From: Heptranchias perlo
Taxonomy: Eukaryota
Reading direction: 5' to 3'
Length of the DNA stretch: 64,000 nucleotides
NCBI RefSeq assembly: GCF_035084215.1
Contig: NC_090340.1
Span: 5,828,001-5,892,000, forward strand
Position 1 is the stretch's first letter. Each line of letters opens with the position of its first letter. A program made the translations under genes and the position numbers. The notes under the pieces were generated by a model. That model did no database searches and was not told the DNA's origin. It worked only from the letters and a program-made list of their open reading frames with translations. Of the stretch, positions 8,355-42,048 are shown in pieces.

Positions 8355-9678
8355 GTAGTATCATAGAATCAGAAAAGGTTACAGCACGGAAGAACAATCC
8401 AGCTAGTCCCACTCCCCCGCCCTTTCCCCGTAGCCATGCATTTCTTTTCCTTTCAACTACTTATCCGGTTCCCTTTTGAAAGCCACGATTGAATCTGCGT
8501 CCACCCACCACCACCACCCCGAACCCTCCCTCCCCCTCCAACTGGCAGTGCAATCCAGATCCCAACTACTCGCTGCATAAAATAGATTTCATCATGTCAC
8601 CTTTGGTTCTTTTGCCAATCACCTTAAATCTATGTCCTTTGGTTCTTGACCTTTCCGCCAATGGGAACAGTTTATCTCCATCTATTATGTCGAGACTCTT
8701 CATGACTTAAAATACCTCTATCAAATCTCTTCTCAACCTGCTCTGTTCCAAGGAGAACAATCCGAGCTTCTCCAGTCTATCCGCGTAACTAAAGTCCCTC
8801 ATCCATGGAATCATTCTAGTAAATCTGTAAATGCAAACTCTCTAAGGTTGTCACATCTTTCCTAAAGTATGGTTCCCAGAACTGGACACAATACTCCAGT
8901 TGTGATCGAACCGGTGTTTTATAAAGATTCATCATGATTTCCTTGCATTTGTACTCTATGTTTCTATTCATAAAGCCCAGCATCCCGTATGCTTTTTTGA
9001 CCGCTTTCTCAACCTGCCCTACCACTCTCAACGATTTGTGCATATAAAACACCGGATCTCTCTGTTCCTGTATCCCTTTTATAATTGAGCCCCCTAGATT
9101 ATATTGTGTCTCCTCGCTCTTCTCACCGAAATGCATCACTTCGCATTTTTCAGTGTTAAATTTCATCTGCTGCGTGTCTGCCCATGCCACCAGCCTGTCT
9201 ATATCCTCTTGAATTCTATCACTATTCTCCTCGCTGTTTCCTACACTTCCAAGTTTTGTGTCACCTGCAAATTTTGAAATTGTGCCCTGTTCACCCAAGT
9301 CCAAGTCATTAATATGTATCAAGAAAATCAATGGTCCCAGCAGCGACCCCTGGGGAACACCACTGGACACCTCCCTCCAGTCCGAAAAACAACCGTTCAC
9401 CACTACTCCGTTTCCTCTCACTTAGCTAATTCTGTATCCGTGTTGCTATTGCTCCTTTTATTCCATGGGCTGCAATTTTGATGATAAACCCACCATGGGG
9501 CACTTTATCAAACGCCTTTTTAAAGTCCATACACACCACATCAAGTGCATTACCATTATCTACCCTCTCTGTTACCTCATCAAAAAACTCTATCAGGTTA
9601 GTTAAACCGATTTGCCTTTAACAAATCTGTGCTGGCTTTCCCTAATCAATCCACACTTGTCCAAGTGACTGTTAATTC
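8355..9678 (-). mobile_element. CR1 LINE, 5'-truncated
   Basis: ORF 8816-9421 has GVPQGSLLGPLIFLIHINDL...SKFAGDTKL...LEYCVQFW; ATCATAGAATC tail at the left end. Confidence 0.95.
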
Positions 9679-14210: not shown

Positions 14211-15250
14211 AGTTGCTGCCTTCAAAACTGGAGACATTGGAGTTAATATACAACCTCAGCGGAGGCGCAAAACAGGCGGTAGCTGATCGGCCGCCCGTTA
14301 TATACTCCCTAATTCTCCTTTCCACCTATATCATTTTCACGAACAGTTCCAAATACCTTACACATAGCGAGCTAAGCAATGCAACTCCTCCTCATTGTGA
14401 CACAGTGGGGGTGGAGTGAAATTGGTCTTCGGCAATAGCGTCAAACGGGCAATAGTGTGCGCCAGTTTTGCCCCACCACCAGAAGTCCAATTTCACTCCC
14501 CAAAAAGAAGAACTGTGTTTAAGGCTTCCACGCTCCTGTCACCGAGGTTAAGACGGAGTTGCTCGCGTATATGCTCTAGCTTCGATCTTCCTTTCCACCT
14601 TCTCTCGATGGGGATAGGTGAAAAGAACGGTCTGTTCCCCACTTTCAGCGATTAACGGAACGCATTTCTGGCTAATTCCTATGTCGCAGGACGTCTGAGG
14701 AAAGGCGCATAATGGAATGCAGAGAATAATTATTTCTGTGAAGTTAAATACAGATATCATAAGTTGACAATGGCCCACAAGATTGATAAGGTAGGCTTGC
14801 ATTTATTCAGGTAATATCTGGTGGCCCTGACATCTGAAAGCGTTTTACACATTAAATACAGTTAGTGCGGAATACCGGTTCTGCCGGCAAAGGTGATTGA
14901 CAATCTGGGATCGCAAGGTCCCACAAACAGCGGAGGGTGGGTGAGCAGTCAATTAGTTTGTACTGTTGTTGGCCGAGAGAACATTGTTGGCTACTACACA
15001 GAGAAAATAGCCTTATTGTCGGAAAGACAGGGCGATCCGCGCAACTATTACATTGTTTAAAGTTATGCATGTCCACTAACGCACACCTACAACAAATTGC
15101 CTGCATTGAATCTTTGCAACAGTTCATGAAACCCTTTCCGAGTAGCAACAGCAGATGTGGAAATAACCAACAGGGTGTCCTTTGAAATTAACATTTTCAG
15201 CAGTTATCATGCGTACTGCGGGTGGTTCAAGTTGCTTATGGTCATTGCAC

Positions 15251-15344: not shown

Positions 15345-15423
15345 ATGATCGCTTCAATTCAACCAGTCAAGATGCTGAGAGCCGTGCTTCAGTGCATGAT
15401 CTTTCTGAAGATCAGCTGCACCG
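15345..15423 (+). CDS. VJ-C1 receptor exon 1: signal peptide
   Basis: AAAATG; reads MIASIQPVKMLRAVLQCMIFLKISCT, then a phase-1 donor ACCG|GTAAAT (alternative in-frame ATG at 15372). Confidence 0.8.
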
Positions 15424-15642
15424 GTAAATTTATTTTTCAGCGCTCTTTCCTAATTATAAACGCCCTTTCATCTCCTTAATTGATTAATATTATTTACGGC
15501 GCTCATTCTGCGCTTTTTTATTATCCGTTTATTGCCAGTGTTTCTTTGCATTTCATAATTTCCTTTATTTTATTGAGCTTCCTTATTTCAATTTCTGCTT
15601 CTGTTTTAATGTTGCGTTTAAACCTTTGTTCGACCGTTGTTG

Positions 15643-15948
15643 GTAATCCTTCGCCAACCGTGAAACAAGCTCCTGATTCCGCAGTGAGGAGCGGCGGCGC
15701 CGTTACTCTATATTGTATATATCCCATCTTCACCGACAAGAGACCAGTGAAAGTGCATTGGTGGAGAGACGGGGAGGATGGATTCTTGGAGGAAAGTGCA
15801 GACAGCAGAATCCGGTTTTATTTCCTAAACAACGGGGGAGCTGCTTTTAAGCTGGTATCTGTGAGAGCCGAGGACGCGGGGCTCTATTACTGCAGAGTGA
15901 TACACCTGACGGTTCTAAATGGAACCGGCACAAAGCTTGATGTTTACG
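15643..15948 (+). CDS. VJ-C1 receptor exon 2: germline-joined VJ-type Ig V domain (NKp30/NCR3-like)
   Basis: GNPSPTVKQAPDSAVRSGGAVTLYCIYPIFTDKRPVKVHWWRDG...EDAGLYYCRVIHLTVLNGTGTKLDVY: B-strand Cys, C-strand Trp, DxGxYYC and a J-like GxGTKLxV; donor TACG|GTGAGT. The acceptor at the expected position reads TG, not AG. Confidence 0.92.
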
Positions 15949-17687
15949 GTGAGTGTCATGGTGATGGGCAATCGGAATCCGCCAACTTCGGTTTGGCATA
16001 TGGTAAATAATTTCAAAGCTCTGCCGCCAATACACTGCAGAATGACAGTCGATTTAATAACGCCTGACTGAGAAGATATAGAAAGCGTAAGGTTCAGAAC
16101 GATCATTCGCTCGCTGTGGCTCATGGTTTAAACAGTCATTTTGAAATGCGATCTTTGTTACTCTATGGTTTCGAATGATATTTTTAATTTTCTACTCCTG
16201 CTGCATAAGATTTCGCCCTTTATTTGAGTAGTTCTCTCAACAATAAACGTGAATGTAAATTTCAAATTAATTTTTCCAACTTTTACTCAAACATAAAAGT
16301 TCTACAATTAATTCATTGGATAACTATATATTTACAAAATAACCGGTAAATTATCAGAGATCACATTTTGAATGTTGCCCTGCTAACTTAATTTATGTGG
16401 ATGAAAATAATTGATATTGAATCAGAAAGGGAATTGAAAGAACATAAAGAGAAAACAATTTCAGTAAGCGTTGTTAGTCTGGATAAATCAGATTTCCGAG
16501 TTTCTTTGCTTCGTTCAAACAAGACCAGCCTAGTGTTAATCACTCGTTTTGATCTCTCATTGTAGCCTATTTTTGAAAGATGCCGCTCATTAAAATGAGC
16601 TCCGTGCCCTTGTAACCTGTGTCACTTTACAGATCGGGGATGTCACTTGTGACATTTACTCGATATGGGTATCACTCTTTTTACATATTGCGAAATATGA
16701 GAGCACCTTGATCTTAGACTCGAAAACAGAATCACACAATTAATATGTAACGATTAATGTGAGCTTTCAAAATGTCGAAAATGTATTTCCATACAACTAA
16801 TTATTTAAAAATATGGTCACTGTTGCTGAACCGGCAAACGCGTGGCTGTTTTTCCCACAGAAAGTTCCGACAAACAGCAAGCAAATGTCTTACTAGTCAG
16901 ACTAGTTTCGTGGTCTGAGAGAGTCACGATCGGCTGCGAGCTTGCTCCTCAGAGTCGCATAGCGCGATACGATCTTTAATGGCGATCAGATGGGGAAGAG
17001 AGGTACAGAATATAACCACATTGGAAAGAGGGCATATGTTACAATGCAGCAATCCATCGGGTAATGCATCATTGTCATAGATTTTGTGTCTAATTTTTGG
17101 ATTGGACCTTATATCCACGTTTGGCCGCCGCAAGGCCAGAGGATTATTGAAACAGATGGGATTACATTTACTCAGACTTGTAGATTGGACTTTGATTTAA
17201 TTTACAATCCATTGATTTTACTTTGATGAGTGCGAGCTCGGCAGAGTTTATTACATCTGGGTTAGATAATTGTGCGTTGGTGCTTCACTACTGGTTCAAT
17301 GTTACGTTGTCGGAGAGACCTTTCCATGGATGAGGCGCTAAGGACCCCACAGCCCACAATCATCCTTTAAAAAAATCTTTTTGATGAGCCAAACATCTCA
17401 TTGTTGCTTTGGACGGCACAACAATGAAGTAATACATGCATTAAGTACTTCGGAAAGTTTGGACAAGATGGTAAGACGCTGTAAGAACGTAGTTATTCTA
17501 TTTCGCAGATGAAACTTATGATAGTTGGCCGATGGAGGGGCTAAGGTATCATTTCATTTGATTCAGCCTCTGTGATGCGATATGCTAAAGGCCCTACATA
17601 AATGTAATCTGTTGTCCTTAGAAGTTTAAAAAAAATCTAACATTTGGCTTAGGAAATATTTACTGGTTCCCTTTCTTATTACATGGA

Positions 17688-17875
17688 GTGGAGATGCCGG
17701 TGATGGACTGGGGCTGACAATTGTAAACAATTTTACAACACCAAGTTATAGTCCAGCAATTTTATTTTAAATTCACAAGCTTTCGTTCACCTGACGAAGG
17801 AGGAACCCTCCGAAAGCTTGTGAATTTAAAATAAAATTGCTGGACTATAACTTGGTGTTGTAAAATTGTTTACAA
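17688..17875 (+). mobile_element. Penelope-type non-autonomous palindromic insertion with 12-bp TSD
   Basis: TTATTACATGGA at 17676-17687 and 17876-17887; perfect 67-bp inverted repeat at 17719-17785 / 17811-17877. Confidence 0.85.
17786..17824 (+). ncRNA. Minimal type I hammerhead ribozyme motif
   Basis: UUCAC (stem I) - CUGACGA - A - GGAGG AAC CCUCC (stem II) - GAAA - GC - UU - GUGAA (stem I'). The conserved core is intact; stem III is vestigial and palindromic (AGCU). Confidence 0.75.
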
Positions 17876-17889
17876 TTATTACATGGAAT

Positions 17890-18885
17890 TACAAAGAATG
17901 TATAGCACCGAAACATGCCATATGGCCTATCGGGTCCATGCTGGTGTTTATGCTCCACACGAGCCTCCTCCCACCCTTCTTCATCTAATCTCTTCAACAT
18001 ATCCTTCAATTACTTTCTCTATCATGTGTTTATCTAGCTTACCCTTCAATGCATCTATGCCTCAGCTACACCTTGTGGTAGCGTTTTCCACATTTTAACC
18101 ACTCTCTAGGTAAAGAAATTTCTCCTGAATTCCCTGTTGGATTTATAAGTGACTATCTTATAATTATGGTCCCTAACCTGGCCTCCCCCGAAAGTAGAAA
18201 CCTTTTCTCTAGATCAACCTATCGCACCCTTTCATAATCTTAAAAACTTCTATCAGGTCACCCTTCAGTCTTCTCTGTTCTAGAGAAAAGAACCCCAGCC
18301 TGTTCAATCGTTCCTGATACGTATAACCTCTCTGTTCTGATATCACCCTAGTAAAGCTGTTTTGCACCTTCTCCAGTGACTCTACGCCCTTTTTTTATAA
18401 TATGAAGATCAGAAATGTTCACAGTACCCCAAGTGTGGTCCAACTAAGGTTCTATAAAAGTTTAACATAACTTCTTTACTTTTCAATTCTAACACTCCAG
18501 GAATGAACCCCAGTGCTTTGTTACACTTTTTATGGCTTTATTAACCGGCGTGGCTAGTTTTAGAGTTTGTTGTAACTGTACCCCCAGATCTCACTGCTCT
18601 GTTACCCCATACAGGCACTTATTTTCCAAGGACTAATCGGCCTCCTTATTCTTCCTACCAAAATCTACCACTTCACACTTATCTATATTGAAATTAATTT
18701 GCCAATTACATGTTCTGCAGTCTTTATTAATGTATTCCTGGATTTTGTTGCATTCATCCTCAGAAATAACTATGCCCCCAATCTGGTGTCATCCGCCAAT
18801 TTTGAAATTGTACTTCCGATTCCGGAGTCCAAATCGTTTATGTAAATAGTGAACAATAATGGTCCCAACCTCGATTTTTCTGGAA
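17890..18885 (-). mobile_element. CR1 LINE, 5'-truncated (intron 2)
   Basis: Reverse complement shows TCAAAATTGGCGGATGACACC (SK.ADDT) and the CR1 3' UTR. Confidence 0.9.
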
Positions 18886-19089
18886 CACGCGCTAATTTGT
18901 ATTGTTCACTGACACTCATAAAATACAGCGAATACGCTTTTAAAACATGTTGAGCTGGTTATAATGTACGGCTGGGGGTCCATTGTGGTTTCATTAAGTC
19001 CTTTATCGGACTTGCAGCGGTGGAATTTGCTTCAGATTCGCGAAATCAATTCACGATGTAAAATCAAATGTTTGCTTCATTTTTTTCAG

Positions 19090-19395
19090 AGCCCCCGACA
19101 CCTCTTTGGATGGCCGCCAGGCGGATTGAAATTGGTTCAGCGCTTCCTCTGACTCTCGTGTGTAAAACAGCCGCGTTTTCCCCGGAGGATCTGAACATCA
19201 CTTGGTACAAAAATGGATCAGAATTTGTAACCGGAATTGAGCATTTCAAACGGCGCAACCCAGCGGGTCTATATGAGGTTACCAGCTACCTGAATGAGAC
19301 AGAGCCCGTGGATAACGGGATGGTTTATACCTGTCAGGTGTCTCATGTTTCCCTCCAGATTCCAGCCAATATCAGCTACACTTTCCATAATTTGG
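19090..19395 (+). CDS. VJ-C1 receptor exon 3: Ig C1-set domain
   Basis: Acceptor TTTTTTTCAG|AG. Reads EPPTPLW...LTLVCKTAAFSPEDLNITWYKNG...GLYEVTSYL...VYTCQVSHVSLQIPANISYTFHNL (C1 signatures LxCxxxxFxP, WxxNG, YxCxVxHxSL); donor TTGG|GTAAGA; phase 1-1, 306 nt. Confidence 0.95.
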
Positions 19396-19973
19396 GTAAG
19401 ATCAACCTATGAATTGTTAGTTTGCTTTAGCCATTTGAAAACGTGATTCTTATGTGCAATAGACATTACCTTAAACAGCTGTTTTAACAGTCTTCTGTTC
19501 AGCAATAGTTTGGGCCGTCACATTTTATGCAGCACAGCTTCGGGTTGCACTGAAGCACAGGTTCTGATTGCTTGACATGTCGTGAAAATATTGCATTGTC
19601 TAGAGGGAAAATAAACGGTAAATAACTAAATTCTAAATCTACCAATCCTGCAGGGAGGTCGGGAAACCTAAAGGGTCCCAGGCGTTACAAATTATTATTG
19701 AAAGTCTTTTAGTGGGTAGTATATTGCTTTCCAGTAAGCCAATGAGTTCATGATGTGAATCATTTCTAAAGGAACAAATTTGTAAAAAGTTCCGAATAAA
19801 AATCATAAAATCAAGATTAAATGTATCTAGAAAATGTCATTTGTTTGTTCCACGCTGAGAAACCTGAAAGCTTTGGCCACGGGCTTTCCTGGACTGTCAC
19901 TCTATCATTTGAAGGAAGATCTCAATACGTAATAGATTACAACTCGCAAAATGTCCAGAATCACTTAATGAGG

Positions 19974-21411
19974 CACTTTAAGGACAAAGTGATTTAGGTC
20001 AATTGAAAAGAAATTCGGGCGGAGTACAGAACGTCGGCCGATTCTCCATCGCCCGTTTTGCGCTACCGCCCAAGACCAATGTTCACCCTCAAGATCCTAA
20101 AATGAAACCAAGTTTCACGCCGCAAACTTGTCTTCAAGTCAAATGAACAGCACGATATTTTGAACTTGTTGGCCCGCTTAATAGACCAGGGTCTTTTAAT
20201 GATTGACGGTGACACTAACCATTCAGACTGCAATGTTTTTTTTTGATTGTAACCACCGCTCTCTCCTGTACGGATGGCAAAGCACTGGCGTCACAAGCGG
20301 GTGGGCTATTTCTATAATTGGAAAGTTATTGTTGTATTAAAGCACCAAAAACATAAACCATGACCTTTGGAACATTAACTGAAGCAACTGGGCCAGGAAG
20401 TTAACTATCTGCAGGCGGCTGTTTATTTATGTGGCACGTGTTTAGTAAAGCAGAAATCCGGGTATTTTCTGTTGCAGAAGGGATAATTTTACCCTCATTC
20501 ACCCGGTGGGCAGTGTGTAAAGCTAACGCTTCATCCTATCCCGTCAGTTTCTCGACAGGCTGGTAAGGTTAAAATTGCCCTCTTGGTCTCCACAGCCTTC
20601 TGTGGTATAGAATTCCACCGGTTCACCACTCTCTGAGTGAAGAAATTTTTCCTCATCTCAGTCCAACATGTCCTACCCCGTATCCGGAGACTGTACCCCT
20701 CATTCTAGATCACCCAGCCAGGGGAAATATCCTCTCTGCATCCAGTTTGTCTAGCACTGTCAGAATTTTATACATTTCAATGAGATAGCCACTTTAAGGA
20801 AAAGTGATTTAGGTCAATCGAAAAGAAAATCGGGCAGAATGCCTGTCCAGCGATTCTCCATCGCCCGTTTTGCGTAACTGCAAGACGAATTTTCACCCTA
20901 AAGATCTTAGAATGAAACCAAGTTTCAGGCCGCAAACCTGCCTTCAAGTCAAATGAACAGCACCATATTTTGAACTCGTTGGCCCGCTTACCACACCAAG
21001 ATTTTTAACGATTGACAGTGAGACCGGCCATTCAGACTGCAACGTTTTGTTGCTTGTTACCACTGCTCTCTTCTGGACGGATGGAAAAGCATTGGCGTCA
21101 CACGCAGGTGAGCTATTTTTGGAGTGGAAAGTTGTTATTTGTATCAAAGCGCCAAAAGCATAAAACATGTCTCTTGGAATATTAACTGAATCAACCGGGC
21201 CAGCAAGCTAACTACCTGCAGGAAGTTATTTATTTATATGGCACATGTTTAGTAAAGCAGCAATCTGTGTATTTTCTGATGCAGACGGAGCAATTTTACC
21301 CTAACTCACCCGGTGGGAAACCCAATTTAATGGAGATTAAAAACCGGCAGAGTGTGAAGCCAGCTGATCCCGTCAGTTTCCCGACCAGCAGTTTAAGTTA
21401 AAATTGCTCCC
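19974..21411. repeat. Diverged tandem duplication (~610 bp x2) in intron 3, copies separated by a CR1 fragment (~20582-20788)
   Basis: Copy 1 (~19974-20582) and copy 2 (~20790-21411) share CACTTTAAGGA..AAAGTGATTTAGGTCAAT, GATTCTCCATCGCCCGTTTTGCG, CTTCAAGTCAAATGAACAGCAC and CCCGTCAGTTTC. Confidence 0.9.
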
Positions 21412-22163
21412 ATTGTCTCGAAATTTGATCTGTAATTGAAAAACGTTTCCACTTTGCAACTGTCTCCTAAAGCACTGCTGGGGCAAAAAAAGAATAATAT
21501 TTTTACATGGTCCGAATCTGCAGTGAGTTCCCAGTAAGCTGGCCTTTTCCCGGGCCATTATGTCTCTGCATTTTACATACAGAGATGAATTAGGTTGCTT
21601 TGTGATGTGTGAAAAGGAGCAATTATTTATCTACCTACAGTCTCTAAGGAAACCGATTTCATAGTTATCAGGGTCCCACAAACAGAAATTAGATACTGGC
21701 CCGTTACTCTGCTTTTGGAGTTGTTCATTCGTTCTGTATTAGTTTTCTGTCCAACTCTGTGGTATATATTCTCCCACTGAAAGTAGTATACATATCAGAA
21801 AATATGTGTGTTTTTATAAAAAAGTAGACTTCCTAATGCCCGAAATGCACCAATTAAAATACCAAAATTTAACTTTTCTGAGGAAACATTGCCTCAACTG
21901 CTTCCAGAAAATAGATCTAATGGTTGATGTGCGGTACACCCATTTTAAATCCCCAGTGCAGCCCTGACTCGAAGAAATCAGACCATGTCAGCGGGTGAGA
22001 ATATAATCAGTCCCAACATTCAGGGCACAGTAAAATTATAGATCCTTAATTAACTGGAAAGATTCAGACTGATTATACAACTCACTCTCTCTCTCTCTCC
22101 TTTTGTCTCTTTGCTGTTTCTCATGAGAATCCTTAAATTTTTTCTTCTGTTGCTACCCACCAG

Positions 22164-22276
22164 GTTCTACTGACCGATTCAAAACCATCAACCTGCGCCG
22201 TTTATTATTGGGGTTAATGGTGATTCTGATGGGGTCCGCCGTCATCGTGGACCATTTGAATTCAGTCCCCTTTTAA
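22164..22276 (+). CDS. VJ-C1 receptor exon 4: connecting peptide, transmembrane segment and short tail
   Basis: Acceptor CTACCCACCAG|GT after a pyrimidine tract; reads GSTDRFKTINLRRLLLGLMVILMGSAVIVDHLNSVPF*; donor AG|GTAAGG at 22279. Confidence 0.85.
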
Positions 22277-22479
22277 AGGTAAGGCATTATTTTTTCGTTT
22301 CAGATTATCGCAGCAGAAATATAACAATAGAAGAAAGCAAGCAAAAAGAGATAGAATCCTTTATGTGAATTTAGCTGTCTGGGTGGATTGTCTTCCTACA
22401 TATTGGCTGCCCCTCATTCATTCCCAAATTTCTTATCCACCCGAGTATTCACAGCAGGAAAAGTAAATCATATTAAAGT

Positions 22480-22740
22480 GTGAATATGTCACTCGTTGTT
22501 ACGCACCCAACTTTCACTCGCTGTTATACACACAAACTCATCTCTCACTCGCTGTTACACACCCACGCCATATCTCATTTACTGTAAAATACACACAGCC
22601 AAGTCTTACTCACTTTGCTAACCCACACCGATCCGTCACTCACTATTACAACCCAAACACTTAACTCTCAATCACTTTACACACCCACACCCTTCTCTCA
22701 CTAACTCACACAAGTACAGCTACAACTCAATGTTTGTTAC
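22480..22740. repeat. Degenerate CA-rich minisatellite (CACTCGCTGTTACACAC-like units)
   Basis: Recurrent CACTCGCTGTTA(C/T)AC motif. Confidence 0.6.
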
Positions 22741-22939
22741 TGATCCTCGTTTATCACTGACTCAGAAACCATTCTCTATAATTTTCTGCATGTAATACAG
22801 CTGCAGAGCTTGAATTTTCACTCGTTTGCTCTTCTGGATATAATGACCCAACTTGTACACTTGATCACAGAACAGATAGCCGGACACCCTTCATTCTGTC
22901 TTTATACAGGGCCAGTAAAAACCACTAAGCGGCAAGAGC

Positions 22940-24970
22940 TCTACTTACCAAATAAAAAAGCCATGGTCGACAAAAGAGATGAGAGATAAATTAAAACTGA
23001 AGGAAAGAGCAAACAAAAGCGCAAAGAATATTATAGATCCAGGGGATTGGTAGAGATATAAAGAAAACCAAAGGAAGAAATAAAAGATAGAAAGGTCTGC
23101 AGAAACCCGGAAAAGAAACTTTCAAGGGATGTAAAGAATAACATAAACAGTTTTTTAAATTATGTTAAAAGTAAAAGAGTAATCTCGGGTAATGTGGGGC
23201 CCTTAAAAATGGAAACAGGCGATATTGCAAATGAAAATATGGAAATAACAGATTTGTTGAATAATACTTTGTGGTCAGTCTTCAGAGTGGAGGAAGAGGA
23301 TATTATACATGACATTCCAATTAAACTAATAATGAATCAAGATCTGGAACGCACTAAAGTTAACATAAGCAAGAAAACAGTATTAGAAAAAATAATGGCA
23401 CTAAAGACTGACAAATCCCCAGGATCTGATAGTTTCCACCCTCGGTTTTTAAAGGAAGTAGGTGAGGAAATTTCAGATGCTTTAGCCATAATCTTCCAAC
23501 GCTCTCTTGATTCAGTACTTGTTCCTTTTGATTGGAAGAGTGCAAATGTAACTCCATTAATTAAGCAAGGTGTGCGAGAGAAATCTGAAAATTTTAGACC
23601 TGTTAGTCCAACGCATGTTGTGGGGAAGATATTGGAATCTGTAATGGACAGCGTGACTGAGCACTTAGAGAAATTTAAGCTGATTAGAGAGAGCCAACTT
23701 TGATATGTAACGGGCGGGTCCTGTCTAACGAAACTAATTGAATTGTTTGAGGAATTAACCAAAGTAGTAGACAGGTGAATGTCTATGGATGTTGTTGAGA
23801 TGGACTTTCGCAAGGCATTTGACAAGGTTCTACATAAGATGCTGTCTGCAAAAAATTAAAGCTCATGGAATTGGAGGCAAATTATTGACCTGGTTAGCAG
23901 ATTGGTTAGGTGGTAGAACACAGAGAGTAGGGATAATGGCTATGTACTCGAATTGGAAGGAAGTGAGTAATGGTGTCCCACAACGATCTGTGTTGGGGCC
24001 TCAACTATTCACTACATATAATAATAACTTAGATAACACAATAGAGAGCCATATATCCAAGTTTACTGAATACACAACATTAGTGGCATAGTAAGTAGTG
24101 CAGACAGAATCATAGAATTACAAAGAGACATTGATAGATTCTGTAAGTGGGCACAACTGTGGCAGGTCGATTTCAATGCAGGTAAGTGTGAGGTCATCCA
24201 CCTTAGAGAGGGTAATGAATGGGAGCTCCGAGCATTTTTAAATGGTGAAAAGCCAGGAACAGTGGAGGTCCAAAGAGATTTAGTAGTCCCTGTACACAGA
24301 TTACTAAAATATAGTGGTCAGGTTCAAGAAATAATCAAAAAGGCTAATCGAATGCCAGCCTTTATATCTAGAGGGCTAAAATATAAAAGGGAGGATGTTT
24401 TTTCTTCTACAGCTGTCCAAAGCCCGTGTTAGACCATATCTGGAGTACTGTGCACAATTCTGGACGCGGCTCCTTAGAAAGGATATATTGGCCTTAGAAC
24501 GAGTGCAGCGTAGATTAGCCAGAATGTTACCAGCAGTCCAAGAGTTAAAATATGAGGCGAGATTACATAAACTAGGCTTGTATTCCCTGGAATATAGAAG
24601 GTTAAAGCGTGATTTCATTGACGTTTGTGGGATTTTGAATGGAACTGATAGGGTAAATAGAGGGGACATAGCCTTAAAATCAGAGCCAGGAGAGAAGTTA
24701 GGAAACATTTCTTCACGCTAAGGGTGGCAGAAGTGTGGAACTCTCACCCTCAAAAAGCAGTAGATTATAGCGCAATTAATAATTTAAATCTGAGATCGAT
24801 AGATTTCAGCAAGCCAACGTTATTAAACAATATGGAGCCAAGGAGTGTATATGGAGTTAGAATACAGGTCTGCCATGGCATCATTCAATGGCGGAACAGG
24901 TTCAAAGGGCTGAATGGCCTACTCCTGTTCTTAAGTTCTAATTGATACAGGGACATTCCTATGTTCCTAC
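22940..24970 (+). mobile_element. CR1 LINE ORF2 fragment with 3' end (intron 4)
   Basis: ORFs 23194-23703 (KSPGSDSFHPR, WKSANVTPL), 23789-24091 (GVPQRSVLGP) and 24395-24721 (LEYCAQFW). Confidence 0.95.
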
Positions 24971-25621
24971 ATGCGGTTTGAGATGCCTATATTACGTCGT
25001 GACGGTGCCAGATAATTAATTTATCTTTTGAAATGTTTATTTGTTTCTATTTATGAAGAGATTAAATCATGTCGAACACAACAGGATTACGTACGTGTGT
25101 GGTAGTGTATGTCTGTCCGTTTTCCCGTGTATAGTTTTGTGTGGTCTGTTTGTTTTTTTGTGTGTCTGTATGGTTGTGTGTCCGTCTGTTTTTCTGTGCA
25201 CGTGTGTGTGGTTTTGTGAGTATTTCCTACAATTCAACACAACTTGCCAACTGCTGCGGTCCTGCTCCAAGGCCCGTAAGGTACTGCCATCCCACGAAAT
25301 GGCCATTGTTCACGATAGAGCCCAGATAGGGAGGGTCCCAGGGCCAAGAACGCTTTTTATAATAAAGTCGAGCGACAACTGACCTCGCCCAAACTAAAGC
25401 ACATAAGTGGGCACAATTAGGGCCAGGGTCGCTAGCTGATCTTCCTCATCATGGGACACGATGACAATTTGTACAACTCCTGTCCCGGCTGAGGTCCGAT
25501 AACTCAGTACAACAAATATTCAATTTAGGACCTTCCTGTTTTCATGCCTCAATATCAAACGCGCCTTGCTATGCTCCAGATTTACTCCGGTTCATTAATA
25601 AATCTTCTTTCCTTTTAACAG

Positions 25622-25702
25622 CCAGACACCTGATGACACACTGTCATCGGCTGCTGCCGATTACACGAACTCCAGGAATGCAAGCGCATTAAGTTCAATA
25701 AA
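25622..25702 (+). other. VJ-C1 receptor terminal exon (3' UTR as read; possibly an ancestral cytoplasmic exon) with poly(A) signal
   Basis: Strong acceptor TCTTCTTTCCTTTTAACAG|; the phase-1 reading gives ARHLMTHCHRLLPITRTPGMQAH* (TAA 25690-25692); AATAAA at 25697-25702. Confidence 0.55.
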
Positions 25703-40218: not shown

Positions 40219-42048
40219 TAGATTAGCAGCCAACATAAAAATAATCCAAAAGCCTTCTACAGGCATGTAAACGGCAAACAGGTAGCAAGAGGAGGAGTGG
40301 GGCCGATTAGGTATCATAAAGAAGATCTACTCATTGAGGCAGAGGGGATGGCCGAGGTACTAGATGAGTACTTGGCATCTGTCTTTACCAAGGGAGAAGA
40401 TGCTGCCAGAGGCTCAGTAAAGGAAGATACAGTTGAGATACTGGATGGGATAAAAATTGATAGAGAAGAAGTACTTCAAAGGTTGGCTCTACTTAAAGTA
40501 GATAAATCACCTGGTCCGGATAAGATGCATCCTAGGTTGCTGAGGGAAATAAGGGTGGAAATTGCGACGATACTGGCCATAATCTTCCAAACATCCGTAG
40601 ATACGGGAGTGATGCCAGAGTGCTGGAGCATTGCCAATGTTACACCCTTGTTCAAAAAAATATGCAAGTGTAAACCCACCAACTATAGGCCAGTCATTTT
40701 AACCTTAATGGTGGGGAAACATTTAGAAAGGATAATCAGCGACAGAATTAACAATCACTTGGATGAGTGTGGATTGATTGGGGAAAGCCAGCACGGATTT
40801 GTTAAAGGCAAATTGTGTTTTACTAATCTGATAGTGTTTTTTGATGAGGTAACAGAGAGCAATGCAGTTGATGTGGTGTAATTGGACTTTCAAAAGGTGT
40901 TTGATATAGTGCTGCATGGTAGGCTTATCATCAAGATTGCGACCCATGGAATAAAGGGGGCGGTAGCAACATGGATATAGAATTGGCTAAGGGACAGGAA
41001 ACAGAGTAGTAGTGTACGGTTGTTTTTCGGAATTGGGGGAGGTGTACAGTGGTATTCCCCAAGGGTCTGTGCTGGGACCGCTGCTTTTCTTGAAATATAT
41101 TAATCACTTGGACTTGGGTGTACACGGCACAATTTCAAAATTTGCAGATGACACAAAACTCGGAAGGGTAGTAAACAGTGAGGAGGAGAGTGATAGACTT
41201 CAAGAGGATAGAGACAGTCTGGTGGCATGGGCGGACACGTGGCAGATGACATTTAACAGGAAAATGCGAAGTGATACATTTCGTTAGGAAGAATGAGGAG
41301 AGCCAAGATAAAGGGCACAACTCTAAAAGGTGTAGAGGAACAGAGAAATCTGGGGGTATATGTGCACAAATCGATGGAGGTGAAAGGGCTGGTTGAGAAA
41401 GCATTTAAAAAACATACGGGATCGTGGACTTTATAAATAGAGGCATAGGGTCACGATGAAACTTTATCAACCACTGATTCGGCCACAACTGGAGCATGGT
41501 ATCCAATTGTGGGCACCGCACTTTACGAAAGATGTGAAGGCTTTCGAGAGGGTGCAGAAGAGAATTATTAGAATCATTCCAGGAATGAGAGACTTTAGTT
41601 ACGTGGATAGACTGAAGAAGCTGGGATTGTTCGCCTTGGAACAGAGACGGTTGCGAGGAGATTTGATAGAGGTATTCAAAATCATGAAGGGTCTGGACAG
41701 GATAGATAGAGAGAAAGTGTTCCCATTGGCGGAAGGGTCAAGAATCAGAATACGTAGATTTAAGGTGTTTGGCAAAAGAACCAAAGGTGATCTGAGGAAA
41801 AACCTTTTTACACAGTGAGAAGTTAGGATCTGAAATGCACTGCTCGAGGGGGTGGTGGAGGCAGAATCAATCATGTCCTTCAAAACGGAACTGGATAAGT
41901 ACTTGAAAGGAAAAAAAATGCAGAGCTAAGTGGATAGGGCGGGGCAGTGGGACTAGCTAGATTGCTTTTGCGTAGAGCATGTGCGGCCTCGATGGGCCAA
42001 ATGGTCTGCTTCCGTGCTGTAACCATTCTATGATTCTATGATTCTATT
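40219..42048 (+). mobile_element. CR1 family A, 5'-truncated
   Basis: KSPGPDKMHPR, GIPQGSVLGP, FADDTKL; (ATTCTATG)n tail. Confidence 0.95.

What the first reader, a model, noticed from the sequence alone, without database searches (positions are those of the whole stretch)
15345..25702. Non-rearranging, germline-joined VJ-C1-TM receptor: an antigen-receptor-like chain without RSS
Seen: four phase-1 exons splice into a 267-aa open frame of leader, V, C1 and TM/tail. The V exon contains both YYC and a J-like G strand (NGTGTKLDV), with no heptamer/nonamer between them. The next exon is a clear C1-set domain. Established: VJ plus C1 plus a charged TM is the layout of TCR chains (Ig L chains have VJ-C1 without a TM), whose V and J are split by RSS. 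NKp30/NCR3 has a joined VJ but no C1, and SIRPs are V-C1-C1. Non-rearranging VJ-C1 genes are rare and are discussed as models of the pre-RAG receptor (amphibian VJC1 genes, PRARP, shark UrIg). Differences from TCR/IgL: N replaces the F/W of the J motif (creating an NGT sequon), and there is no interchain Cys after C1. Inference: a possibly uncharacterised shark innate receptor family related to NKp30 and to the antigen-receptor ancestor.
Basis: partly seen in the sequence, partly recalled or inferred. Interest (0 to 1): 0.85.

Follow-up and report, generated by a model that had tools for sequence, protein, structure and literature searches.

The report
Shark short-tailed VJ-C1 paired receptor
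This is one gene of a large shark-and-ray family of non-rearranging immune receptors with an antibody-like two-domain head; it is the short-tailed partner of neighbouring inhibitory genes, and this copy may be splice-damaged.

Summary
The V, C1 and membrane exons are real and all junctions are phase 1. There is no RSS heptamer between YYC and the J-like strand.

An RNA-like contig joins 15423|15637, and there the window has CG, not AG.

The gene is not rare. It belongs to a family seen almost only in cartilaginous fish: 39 of 43 profile hits. RefSeq predicts members under automatic names such as SIRP-alpha-like, Ig-lambda-like, B7-H6-like and tapasin-related.

Its V is 99% and its C1 94% identical to Heptranchias perlo XP_067853506.1, which has a long tyrosine-motif tail. 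The window has no such tail exons. It carries instead a conserved R-x16-[D/E]-H anchor and an 8-residue tail. I read it as the activating-type or decoy partner of inhibitory neighbours.

No contig matched this copy exactly and no protein entry exists for it, so a young pseudogene is about as likely.

This scan has already found the family in at least nine other windows of this chromosome. No paper on it was found in the held library. Kinlein 2021, on the shark NCR3 family, could not be read.

The parts
15345..15423 (+). Leader exon (ATG 15345; second in-frame ATG 15372 is the start used in the paralogue's model). It ends in phase 1 before GTAAAT.
   Evidence: 16 of 17 residues are identical to the start of P0001. 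Covered by the X1 contig.
15424..15636 (+). Leader intron of 213 nt, a 'split leader'. In this copy it reads GT..CG, not GT..AG.
   Evidence: Contig joint 15419>15633 with 4 ambiguous letters, i.e. 15423|15637. AG positions are listed.
15637..15948 (+). VJ exon as joined in near-identical transcripts. An alternative in-frame start is 15670, after the first AG.
   Evidence: Pfam V-set and Ig_3. 99% identity to P0001 V. Contig piece 15633-15947 with 4 other letters.
15918..15944 (+). J-like G strand NGTGTKLDV with an NGT sequon, contiguous with YYC.
   Evidence: G113 is invariant and G115 nearly invariant in 37 family members.
19090..19395 (+). C1-set exon, phase 1 at both ends, with 4 N-glycan sequons.
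   Evidence: C1-set 4e-12. 94% identity to P0001 C1. Joint 15948|19090 is GT..AG.
19396..19412 (+). Read-through past the C1 donor adds GKINL, then a stop. AATAAA follows at 19610 and 19795. This is a possible soluble isoform.
   Evidence: X1 contig 19474-19741 has 8 other letters and may come from a paralogue.
22164..22278 (+). Stalk, transmembrane and 8-residue tail exon. The stop, TAA 22274-76, lies 2 nt before the donor GTAAGG.
   Evidence: tblastn to P0015 gives E 0.004. BLASTP to P0182 gives 12/24 identities, E 7e-6.
22199..22255 (+). R-x16-D-H anchor motif.
   Evidence: Six database family members have the same spacing.
25622..25702 (+). Predicted 3' untranslated exon with a good acceptor and AATAAA at 25697-25702.
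   Evidence: Sequence only. Not tested with reads.

Best explanation
The locus is the short-tailed member of a cluster of non-rearranging VJ-C1 receptors of the sharpnose sevengill shark. The family is large and, as far as my searches show, confined to cartilaginous fish.

Shown: the gene has a split leader, a germline VJ exon, one C1 exon, and a membrane exon with Arg at the outer end and Asp-His at the inner end of the hydrophobic stretch. Its ectodomain is nearly identical to that of a paralogue with a long tyrosine-motif tail.

Inferred: both gene products bind the same ligand. The ligand is probably a conserved self ligand, because this sub-lineage runs from chimaera to sharks at 53-71% identity. 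The long-tailed form would inhibit. This form would either couple through its outer Arg to an ITAM adaptor of the FcR-gamma/CD3-zeta type, or compete for ligand without signalling. The glycan sequon at the place of the J motif's F/W argues against an antibody-like V-V pair, so the head probably works as a single chain.

Open: in this assembly the V-exon acceptor is CG. A product needs either the next in-frame AG (15668-9), which costs 11 residues, or an allele with AG.
For: - Domains: Pfam V-set/Ig_3 and C1-set.
- Family: 318 proteins at E<=0.001. 39 of 43 profile hits at E<=1e-8 are cartilaginous fish. All 10 of 10 are too.
- Trees: window V with P0001, SH-aLRT 99. These sit inside a 6-row clade (89) with Heterodontus, Leucoraja, Mobula and Callorhinchus. 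The C1 tree gives the same picture.
- Anchor: the window has no match to P0001 residues 229-368, while its membrane exon matches P0015, P0168 and P0182. R-x16-[DE]-H occurs with the same spacing in 6 database members.
- This anchor needs at least 6 changes of state on the C1 tree among 45 classified rows, as expected if ectodomains are repeatedly shared between partners.
- Open frames are intact in all four coding exons, and 7 of 8 splice dinucleotides are canonical.
- The AlphaFold model of P0001 gives two Ig domains with pLDDT above 90.
Against: - The acceptor used in transcripts (15636|15637) is CG in the window.
- The only spliced contig differs from the window at 4 of 315 V positions. None of the four appears in the differences table, which I take to mean they lie near the piece's ends. 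That is where the paralogue's protein differs (AA for VV, V for D).
- Every X1 contig over C1 differs from the window at 19271 and 19321.
- No protein of this gene turned up in two searches that would have caught it.
- The C1-to-membrane-exon junction is untested.
- Adaptor pairing and a shared ligand are inference only.
- The ectodomain exons are so close to the paralogue's that their open frames say little about selection.
Confidence: 0.5

Rival explanations
1. This is a young pseudogene. It would be a recent duplicate, or gene-conversion recipient, of the inhibitory neighbours that lost its V-exon acceptor. It is not translated into a receptor, and its open frames are intact only because too little time has passed.
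For: - CG stands at the acceptor used by expressed sisters, and there is no other AG for 91 nt upstream.
- No exact RNA contig was seen in 3 runs.
- No protein entry was returned.
- Met replaces the family-consensus Thr in the GTVYTC motif.
- Earlier notes of this scan report dead copies in sister clusters (not checked by me).
Against: - The membrane exon is only about 50% identical to the other R..DH anchors of this genome, yet it keeps the motif, the spacing and the frame. This argues for long-term function.
- A phase-compatible AG lies 33 nt downstream.
- Contigs drop rare variants, so absence from them is weak evidence (text).
- The protein collection also lacks other neighbouring copies.
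Confidence: 0.4
2. It is mainly a secreted decoy. Transcripts would read through the C1 donor, add five residues, and end at the AATAAA signals at 19610 or 19795. The result would be a soluble VJ-C1 protein.
For: - An X1 contig covers 19474-19741 at depth 13.5, against about 31 over the C1 exon.
- Contigs also cover 19406 and 19473.
Against: - That contig has 8 other letters in 268, so it may belong to a paralogue.
- It may also be unspliced precursor RNA.
- Contig depth is no measure of expression level (text).
Confidence: 0.1
3. It is a germline-joined TCR or Ig light-chain gene, or the shark orthologue of NKp30 (NCR3).
For: - The VJ-C1 layout resembles a TCR or light chain. The best Foldseek matches are antibody light chains, E about 3e-16 at 20-23% identity.
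- NKp30 is the best single-V structural match at 28% identity.
- One family isoform is auto-named NCR3-like.
Against: - The gene nests inside a family of dozens of germline VJ-C1 genes with ITIM-type or R..DH anchors.
- It has no RSS, no interchain Cys, and N instead of F/W.
- NKp30 has no C domain.
- Notes of this scan place the MHC class III block on another piece of the assembly (unchecked).
Confidence: 0.03

Closest known systems
SIRP family (SIRP-alpha inhibitory, SIRP-beta activating, SIRP-gamma short-tailed)
   Same: - Both have a non-rearranging V with a J-like strand followed by a C1-set domain.
- Both are paired families in which near-identical ectodomains carry an inhibitory tail, an activating anchor or a short tail.
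- The window C1 hits SIRP-gamma at 4.3e-12 and SIRP-alpha at 2.8e-10.
- The family profile aligns V+C1 in one stretch to SIRP-alpha residues 3-206, E 3.3e-32.
- The nearest Atlas cluster is an SHPS1 fragment, score 0.95.
- RefSeq names many members SIRP-alpha-like.
   Different: - This gene has one C1, not two.
- Its anchor has Arg at the outer end and Asp-His at the inner end. SIRP-beta has a mid-membrane Lys (recalled).
- IgM, UrIg2 and MHC C domains score about as well as SIRP.
- The search with the paralogue's tail found nothing but itself, so tail homology to SIRP-alpha is not shown here.
- Orthology was not tested.
NKp30 / NCR3, including the nurse-shark NCR3 family (Kinlein et al. 2021; recalled, text not held)
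   Same: - Both have a single-exon VJ domain with G-x-G and a glycan sequon in the J-like strand.
- Both have an Arg at the start of the membrane span (recalled for NKp30).
- The paralogue's V aligns to human NKp30 (6yjp_A) at Z 13.7, rmsd 2.4 A, 99 residues and 28% identity. That is the best single V domain in the list.
   Different: - NKp30 has no C domain. This gene has a C1.
- NKp30 did not appear among the best 60 PDB sequence hits of the V exon or of the V profile.
- MHC linkage is not shown for this locus.
- I could not check whether the eight published shark NCR3 subtypes include these V-C1 genes.
UrIg / UrIg2 (non-rearranging shark VJ-C genes; PMC12227049, abstract and section 7 read)
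   Same: - Both are shark genes with a split leader and a single-exon VJ followed by C1-type domains.
- UrIg2 (9dmx) hits the window C1 at 1.4e-11.
- UrIg2 hits the family profile at 1.1e-37.
   Different: - Nurse shark UrIg2 has nine C domains, and UrIg also has several C domains. UrIg2 forms disulfide-linked dimers and is expressed in gill and liver.
- This gene has one C1, no interchain Cys and paired signalling anchors.
- The two-domain superposition is poor, rmsd 9.9 A.
B7 family, especially B7-H6 (NCR3LG1)
   Same: - Both are V + C ectodomains on a single-pass anchor.
- The best two-domain superpositions are to B7-type proteins. B7-H6 (4zso_E) gives Z 15.5, 191 residues aligned and 25% identity. 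Butyrophilin, PD-L1, PD-L2 and ICOS-L follow.
- RefSeq names several members NCR3LG1-like.
   Different: - The C domain scores as C1-set at 4e-12, against 2e-4 for the CD80-like C2-set.
- The V has a J-like G-x-G strand.
- The Z values of all these rows lie within about 2 of each other, so the ranking is not decisive.
TCR chains and Ig light chains
   Same: Both have the order VJ - C1 (- TM), a split leader and phase-1 exons. The top Foldseek matches are light chains.
   Different: This gene has no RSS, no D or J segments, N instead of F/W before G-x-G, and no interchain Cys. It belongs to a germline multigene family.

Membership tests
Cartilaginous-fish VJ-C1 receptor family (unnamed; RefSeq 'SIRP-alpha-like', 'Ig lambda-1-like', 'NCR3LG1-like', 'tapasin-related-like') | V exon with W-W-[KR], YYC and an N-G-T-G-[ST]-x-L-x-V strand in one exon | tested here: met
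   (G113 invariant and G115 nearly invariant in 37 sequences).
Cartilaginous-fish VJ-C1 receptor family | C1 exon beginning PPTPL, with the family's conserved VYTCxVSH-type motif | tested here: met
Cartilaginous-fish VJ-C1 receptor family | Both domains nest inside the family tree | tested here: met
   V tree of 70 rows and C1 tree of 65 rows. The window pairs with P0001 at SH-aLRT 99 in both.
Cartilaginous-fish VJ-C1 receptor family, short-tail class | R-x16-[DE]-H membrane anchor with a short tail | tested here: met
   (6 database members plus the window).
SIRP | Three Ig domains, V-C1-C1 | tested here: not met
   The window holds one V and one C1 exon only.
SIRP | C1 domains closer to SIRP than to other C1 domains | tested here: inconclusive
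   SIRP-gamma scores 4.3e-12, but IgM scores 6.4e-16 and UrIg2 1.4e-11. The Atlas top cluster is SHPS1. Structural Z values are tied.
SIRP | SIRP-alpha-type four-tyrosine tail, or SIRP-beta-type mid-membrane Lys | tested here: not met
   The tail is 8 residues with no Tyr, and the membrane exon has no Lys within its hydrophobic stretch. The paralogue's tail found no SIRP.
SIRP | Binds CD47 | not testable with these tools
   Needs a binding assay.
NKp30 / NCR3 | A single VJ domain with no C domain | tested here: not met
   A C1 exon is joined to V.
NKp30 / NCR3 | V domain closest to NKp30 | tested here: inconclusive
   NKp30 is the best single-V structural match at 28% identity. It is absent from the top 60 sequence hits. 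No tree with references was made.
NKp30 / NCR3 | MHC linkage | not tested
   The window holds only this gene and transposon fragments. Unchecked notes put MHC blocks on other pieces.
TCR / Ig light chain | V and J separated by RSS and joined somatically | tested here: not met
   V to J is contiguous, and there is no heptamer within 1.2 kb.
TCR / Ig light chain | F/W-G-x-G J motif and a membrane-proximal interchain Cys | tested here: not met
   The strand reads N-G-T-G, and exon 4 has no Cys.
UrIg / UrIg2 | VJ followed by three or more C domains | tested here: not met
   There is one C1 exon.
B7 family | V plus a CD80-like C2-type (C1-like) domain, acting as ligand of CD28- or NKp30-type receptors | tested here: inconclusive
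   It gives the best two-domain superposition, but Pfam prefers C1-set by eight orders of magnitude.

The most novel reading that the evidence does not exclude
The family would be a surviving lineage of the pre-RAG VJ-C1 receptor, with this conserved chimaera-to-shark sub-lineage at its core. Its V is nearest NKp30, its V+C pair superposes best on B7-H6, and its C1 and paired signalling are SIRP-like. On this reading NKp30, the B7-H6 type and the SIRPs are reduced or expanded descendants of one receptor type that sharks still keep whole. The conserved glycan at the J position would mark the single-chain state that preceded V-V pairing in antigen receptors.
Probability: 0.12. Interest if true: 0.7.

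Novelty: new member of a known kind. Interest (0 to 1): 0.4.

Why it matters
Paired activating and inhibitory receptors with shared ectodomains are a hallmark of innate recognition in mammals (SIRP, KIR, LILR). Here the same logic appears in the oldest jawed vertebrates, on a chain laid out like half an antigen receptor.

The sub-lineage to which this gene belongs is conserved from chimaera to sharks. That points to a conserved ligand, which could be found with ectodomain-Fc probes.

For the debate on antigen-receptor origins, the family adds dozens of germline VJ-C1 genes beside UrIg, UrIg2 and NCR3. For this particular copy the gain is smaller. It shows the short-tailed partner sitting next to an inhibitory pair, and a likely recent loss of a splice site.

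Tried and rejected

2. Reading the key papers. Kinlein 2021 (DOI, PMC8273117), UrIg 2023 and Flajnik 2012 are not held. 'Not in print' therefore rests only on searches of the held library. Supplements were closed. Table S1 and figs S1-S2 of PMC12227049, and the gene tables of PMC10751288, may list such genes.

3. Placing V and C1 against NKp30, TCR, IgL, SIRP and UrIg in a tree. No tool returned reference sequences as usable ids. PDB sequence searches were swamped by antibodies and multi-Ig proteins, and structural Z values were tied.

4. Testing SIRP-alpha tail homology with the paralogue's tail. Only the query itself came back, so this neither supports nor refutes.

5. A germline-joined TCR or IgL gene was rejected.

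6. A second copy or further Ig exons in the window. None were found.

7. Rfam. Nothing reached gathering scores in the window. No hammerhead family reached E<=1 in 17500-18950.

8. Trees. Before building I dropped 11 isoform or duplicate rows (P0003, P0005, P0112, P0143, P0151, P0152, P0158, P0173, P0175, P0176, P0181). I also dropped rows under 35 bits or under 70-75 aligned positions. Both trees are 'quick' trees on about 100 columns, and many forks are unresolved.

9. In the count of anchor changes, 20 of 65 rows with truncated or unclear tails were left out.

Full report
ANATOMY. On the + strand there is a compact gene.

| Part | Coordinates | Notes |
|---|---|---|
| Leader exon | 15345-15423 | ATG at 15345, second in-frame ATG at 15372, donor GTAAAT |
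| V exon | ends 15948 | donor GTGAGT |
| C1 exon | 19090-19395 | tttttttcag\| ... \|gtaag |
| Stalk/transmembrane exon | from 22164 | after ccag; stop TAA at 22274-76, 2 nt before a consensus donor AG\|GTAAGG |
| Possible 3' exon | 25622-25702 | good acceptor; AATAAA at 25697-25702 |

- All junctions are phase 1.
- Pfam calls the V exon V-set (4.2e-6, 27.4 bits, cut-off 26) and Ig_3 (1.8e-9).
- Pfam calls the next exon C1-set (4e-12, 46.7 bits, cut-off 21). The membrane exon has no family.
- YYC and the strand NGTGTKLDV are contiguous.
- The nearest CACAGTG heptamers are at 14401 and 28475. The window has 10 against 7.7 expected.
- The window has no N, and no second V or C1 exon.
- The rest of the window is reverse-transcriptase debris.

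- The 267-aa frame needs the V exon to begin at 15643, behind TG. There is no AG between 15577 and 15667.
- In the one reads call I used runs X1-X3, which are Logan contigs from one sample. They are RNA-like: exons are covered and unique intron is not.
- One X1 contig of 415 nt joins 15423|15637 and 15948|19090. The first joint was reported as 15419>15633, with four letters (ACCG) fitting either side. The second is GT..AG.
- The first intron is GT..CG in the window.
- Starting at 15637 the frame has 269 codons. Starting at the first AG (15668-9, also phase 1) it has 258.
- In the AlphaFold model of the paralogue, the 11 lost residues hold only a two-residue A-strand bridge.
- The 'charged TM' is really R-x16-D-H. 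The charges flank a 16-residue hydrophobic core.

THE FAMILY.
- An exhaustive HMMER search with the V exon gave 318 proteins at E<=0.001, 69 at 1e-10 and 2 at 1e-30.
- The best hit is 99% identical: P0001 = XP_067853506.1 of Heptranchias perlo, 368 aa. It is named 'tyrosine-protein phosphatase non-receptor type substrate 1-like' and lies on a 66.5-Mb chromosome.
- The 55 single-chain hits that I read share several features. These are a leader, a V with W-W-[KR] and N-G-T-G-[ST]-x-L-x-V, usually a C1 beginning PPTPL, then an anchor. A few lack C1 and one has two.
- In a 37-member alignment W59, C103, G113, P124, C146, C203 and H207 are invariant.
- A profile search returned 43 proteins at E<=1e-8. 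Of these, 39 are from sharks, rays, skates or chimaera. The other four are teleost CEACAM- or pIgR-like proteins or unnamed, at 4e-14 or weaker.
- The search with P0001's ectodomain returned 10 of 10 cartilaginous-fish proteins.
- The names are automatic and inconsistent: SIRP-alpha-like, SIRP-beta-like, Ig lambda-1-like, NCR3LG1-like, tapasin-related-like, CD276, NCR3-like, 'H-2 class I'.
- No row for a protein encoded by the window itself appeared.

POSITION AND PARTNER.
- In the V tree (70 rows) and the C1 tree (65 rows) the window pairs with P0001 at SH-aLRT 99.
- Identity to P0001 is 99% over 102 V columns and 94% over 101 C1 columns.
- Both sit in a clade with Heterodontus, Chiloscyllium, skates and rays, and Callorhinchus (support 89 for V, 82 for C1). 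The order resembles the species tree.
- P0001's ectodomain is 71, 57, 55 and 53% identical to those proteins. This is slow evolution for an immune receptor.
- tblastn of 16 family proteins against the window found no match to P0001 residues 229-368, which hold its membrane span and its tail with several Y-x-x-[LVI] motifs.
- The window's membrane exon instead matched P0015 (E 0.004), P0168 and P0182. BLASTP to P0182 gave 12/24 identities, E 7e-6.
- Six database members (P0011, P0015, P0086, P0148, P0168, P0182) and the window share R-x16-[DE]-H-[VLFI] with identical spacing.
- I classified 45 rows on the C1 tree: 26 tyrosine-motif, 12 of a Cys-rich 'WWIY' type and 7 R..DH. Another 20 unclear rows were left out. 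The R..DH anchor needs at least 6 changes.
- So genes with this anchor are each closest in their ectodomain to genes with other anchors. That is the signature of paired receptors whose heads are exchanged or co-duplicated.

RNA EVIDENCE AND ITS LIMITS.
- The spliced X1 contig has 4 other letters in its 315-nt V piece. None of them appears in the differences table.
- I take this to mean they lie within about 30 nt of the piece's ends. That is where P0001's protein differs from the window (AA for VV at the 5' end, V for D at the 3' end).
- Over C1, X1 holds two variant contigs. One carries 19121, 19142, 19147 (Pro to His, as in P0001) and 19169. The other carries 19180 (Ser to Tyr).
- All X1 contigs carry 19271 and 19321 (Met to Thr, as in P0001). 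An X2 contig also carries 19255 (Arg to His, as in P0001).
- Thus at least three near-identical sequences are transcribed, and none is the window's own.
- Earlier notes of this scan place two expressed inhibitory genes 12-52 kb beyond the window's end (s1-882685). I could not check this.
- The junction 15948|19090 is therefore confirmed for the gene type, not for this copy.
- The junction 19395|22164 was outside the stretch laid.
- A contig at 19474-19741 (8 other letters) lies past the C1 donor. Read-through would add GKINL and stop at 19410-12. AATAAA follows at 19610 and 19795.

IS THIS COPY ALIVE?
For:
- Four intact coding exons.
- 7 of 8 canonical splice dinucleotides.
- An in-frame AG 33 nt beyond the lost acceptor.
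- A membrane exon that has diverged to about 50% from other R..DH anchors of the same genome, yet keeps motif, spacing and frame.

Against:
- CG at the acceptor.
- Three differences from the paralogue's inferred codons packed into 15635-15641.
- Met at a consensus Thr.
- No exact contig and no protein entry.

I put an intact product at about 45-50%.

HOW IT WOULD WORK (inference).
- Same head, different anchor. The long-tailed neighbours would recruit phosphatases through their tyrosine motifs.
- This chain has an 8-residue tail. It could pair through its outer Arg with an Asp-bearing ITAM adaptor, as NKp30, NKp46, OSCAR or GPVI do with FcR-gamma or CD3-zeta (recalled). Otherwise it would act as a non-signalling competitor, as SIRP-gamma does (recalled).
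- The sequon at the place of the J motif's F/W sits where light and heavy V domains touch (established knowledge). This argues for a single-chain head.
- There is no stalk Cys for a covalent dimer.

COMPARISON WITH THE KNOWN.

Sequence:
- The window C1 hits IgM constant domains (6.4e-16, several domains summed), SIRP-gamma (4.3e-12), UrIg2 9dmx (1.4e-11), SIRP-alpha (2.8e-10) and TAPBPR (3e-9).
- The V exon hits mainly antibody light-chain FR3-J stretches, and amphioxus IgVJ-C2 at 2.2e-5.
- The family profile gives a lambda-type V+C stretch (71 bits), UrIg2 (1.1e-37), SIRP-alpha (3.3e-32, one stretch over V+C1) and SIRP-gamma (3.4e-28).
- The Atlas gives 'SHPS1 fragment' for C1 and 'putative antigen receptor fragment' for V, both at 0.95.

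Structure (model of P0001: mean pLDDT 74.5, ectodomain mostly above 90):
- Foldseek puts antibody light chains first, at about 3e-16, 20-23% identity and rmsd about 8 A.
- The search against cluster representatives puts B7-type two-domain proteins first. B7-H6 gives Z 15.5, 191 residues aligned and 25% identity.
- NKp30 is the best single V: Z 13.7, rmsd 2.4 A, 28% identity.
- SIRP-gamma gives Z 13.4 and UrIg2 Z 14.2 with rmsd 9.9 A.
- These rows are nearly tied.

The gene fails defining features of SIRP (three domains, tail or Lys anchor), NKp30 (no C domain), TCR/IgL (RSS, F/W, Cys) and UrIg (several C domains). It therefore works like a SIRP-type paired receptor without being shown to be a SIRP.

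LITERATURE.
- I read the abstract and section 7 of PMC12227049 (UrIg2), plus passages from it, and passages of PMC10751288 (shark MHC). Both treat UrIg, UrIg2 and NCR3/NKp30 as the non-rearranging VJ genes of sharks. Neither mentions this family in the text I saw.
- Passages of PMC8455134 (whale shark genome) did not mention it either.
- Searches found no paper on it. 'NS344823' and 'VJC1' gave nothing relevant.
- Kinlein et al. 2021 is cited in PMC10450919. As I recall its abstract, it describes eight divergent nurse-shark NCR3 subtypes. It may overlap with this family but is not held.

EARLIER WORK OF THIS SCAN. Notes list the same family in at least nine other windows of this chromosome, and several follow-ups call it SIRP-like. 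My own tests agree on the family and on pairing. They do not establish SIRP membership.

VERDICT. It is a new member of a known kind, of moderate interest, lowered by doubt about this copy's function.

Noticed in passing
window 17706-17890 (intron 2): This is a long, near-perfect hairpin. Rfam gives only sub-threshold hits to generic miRNA-precursor models (best 89.9 bits against a gathering score of 249). No hammerhead family reaches E<=1 in 17500-18950.
   Followed up: partly
window 17530-18929 and 20530-20929: Summed contig depth runs from the thousands up to about 180,000 in all three RNA-like runs, with many joints and loose ends. These look like high-copy, transcribed repeats inside introns 2 and 3.
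   Followed up: no
window 19396-19820: Contigs continue past the C1 donor. Read-through would end the protein after five more residues, and two AATAAA signals follow. This is a possible soluble isoform of this gene or of its sisters.
   Followed up: partly
window 22270-22280: The stop codon sits in a T-run 2 nt before a consensus donor. The white-shark relative P0015 reads on past the matching residues for ten more residues, one of them before the presumed junction. The length of the T-run therefore decides whether the tail stops here or continues into the 25622 exon.
   Followed up: no
P0011 residues 1-127 versus window 4833-63634 (more than 10 places): The N-terminus of this database family member matches reverse-transcriptase-like repeat fragments scattered through the window. 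That gene model is probably a transposon-receptor chimaera.
   Followed up: no
window 15345-22278: Every exon is phase 1. Skipping the V exon, a common result of a lost acceptor, would still give an in-frame leader-C1-TM chain.
   Followed up: no
window 8816-9421 (-) and 40297-40881 (+): ORFs with Pfam RVT_1 matches (2.3e-9 and 9.4e-5). These are LINE-type debris. No other host gene was seen in the 64 kb.
   Followed up: partly
family proteins P0020, P0163, P0164, P0166 and others: This is a distinct, well-conserved sub-family. It has a 'PWWIY' membrane start, a Cys-rich juxtamembrane stretch and a basic tail without tyrosine motifs. It made up 12 of the 45 classified rows.
   Followed up: no
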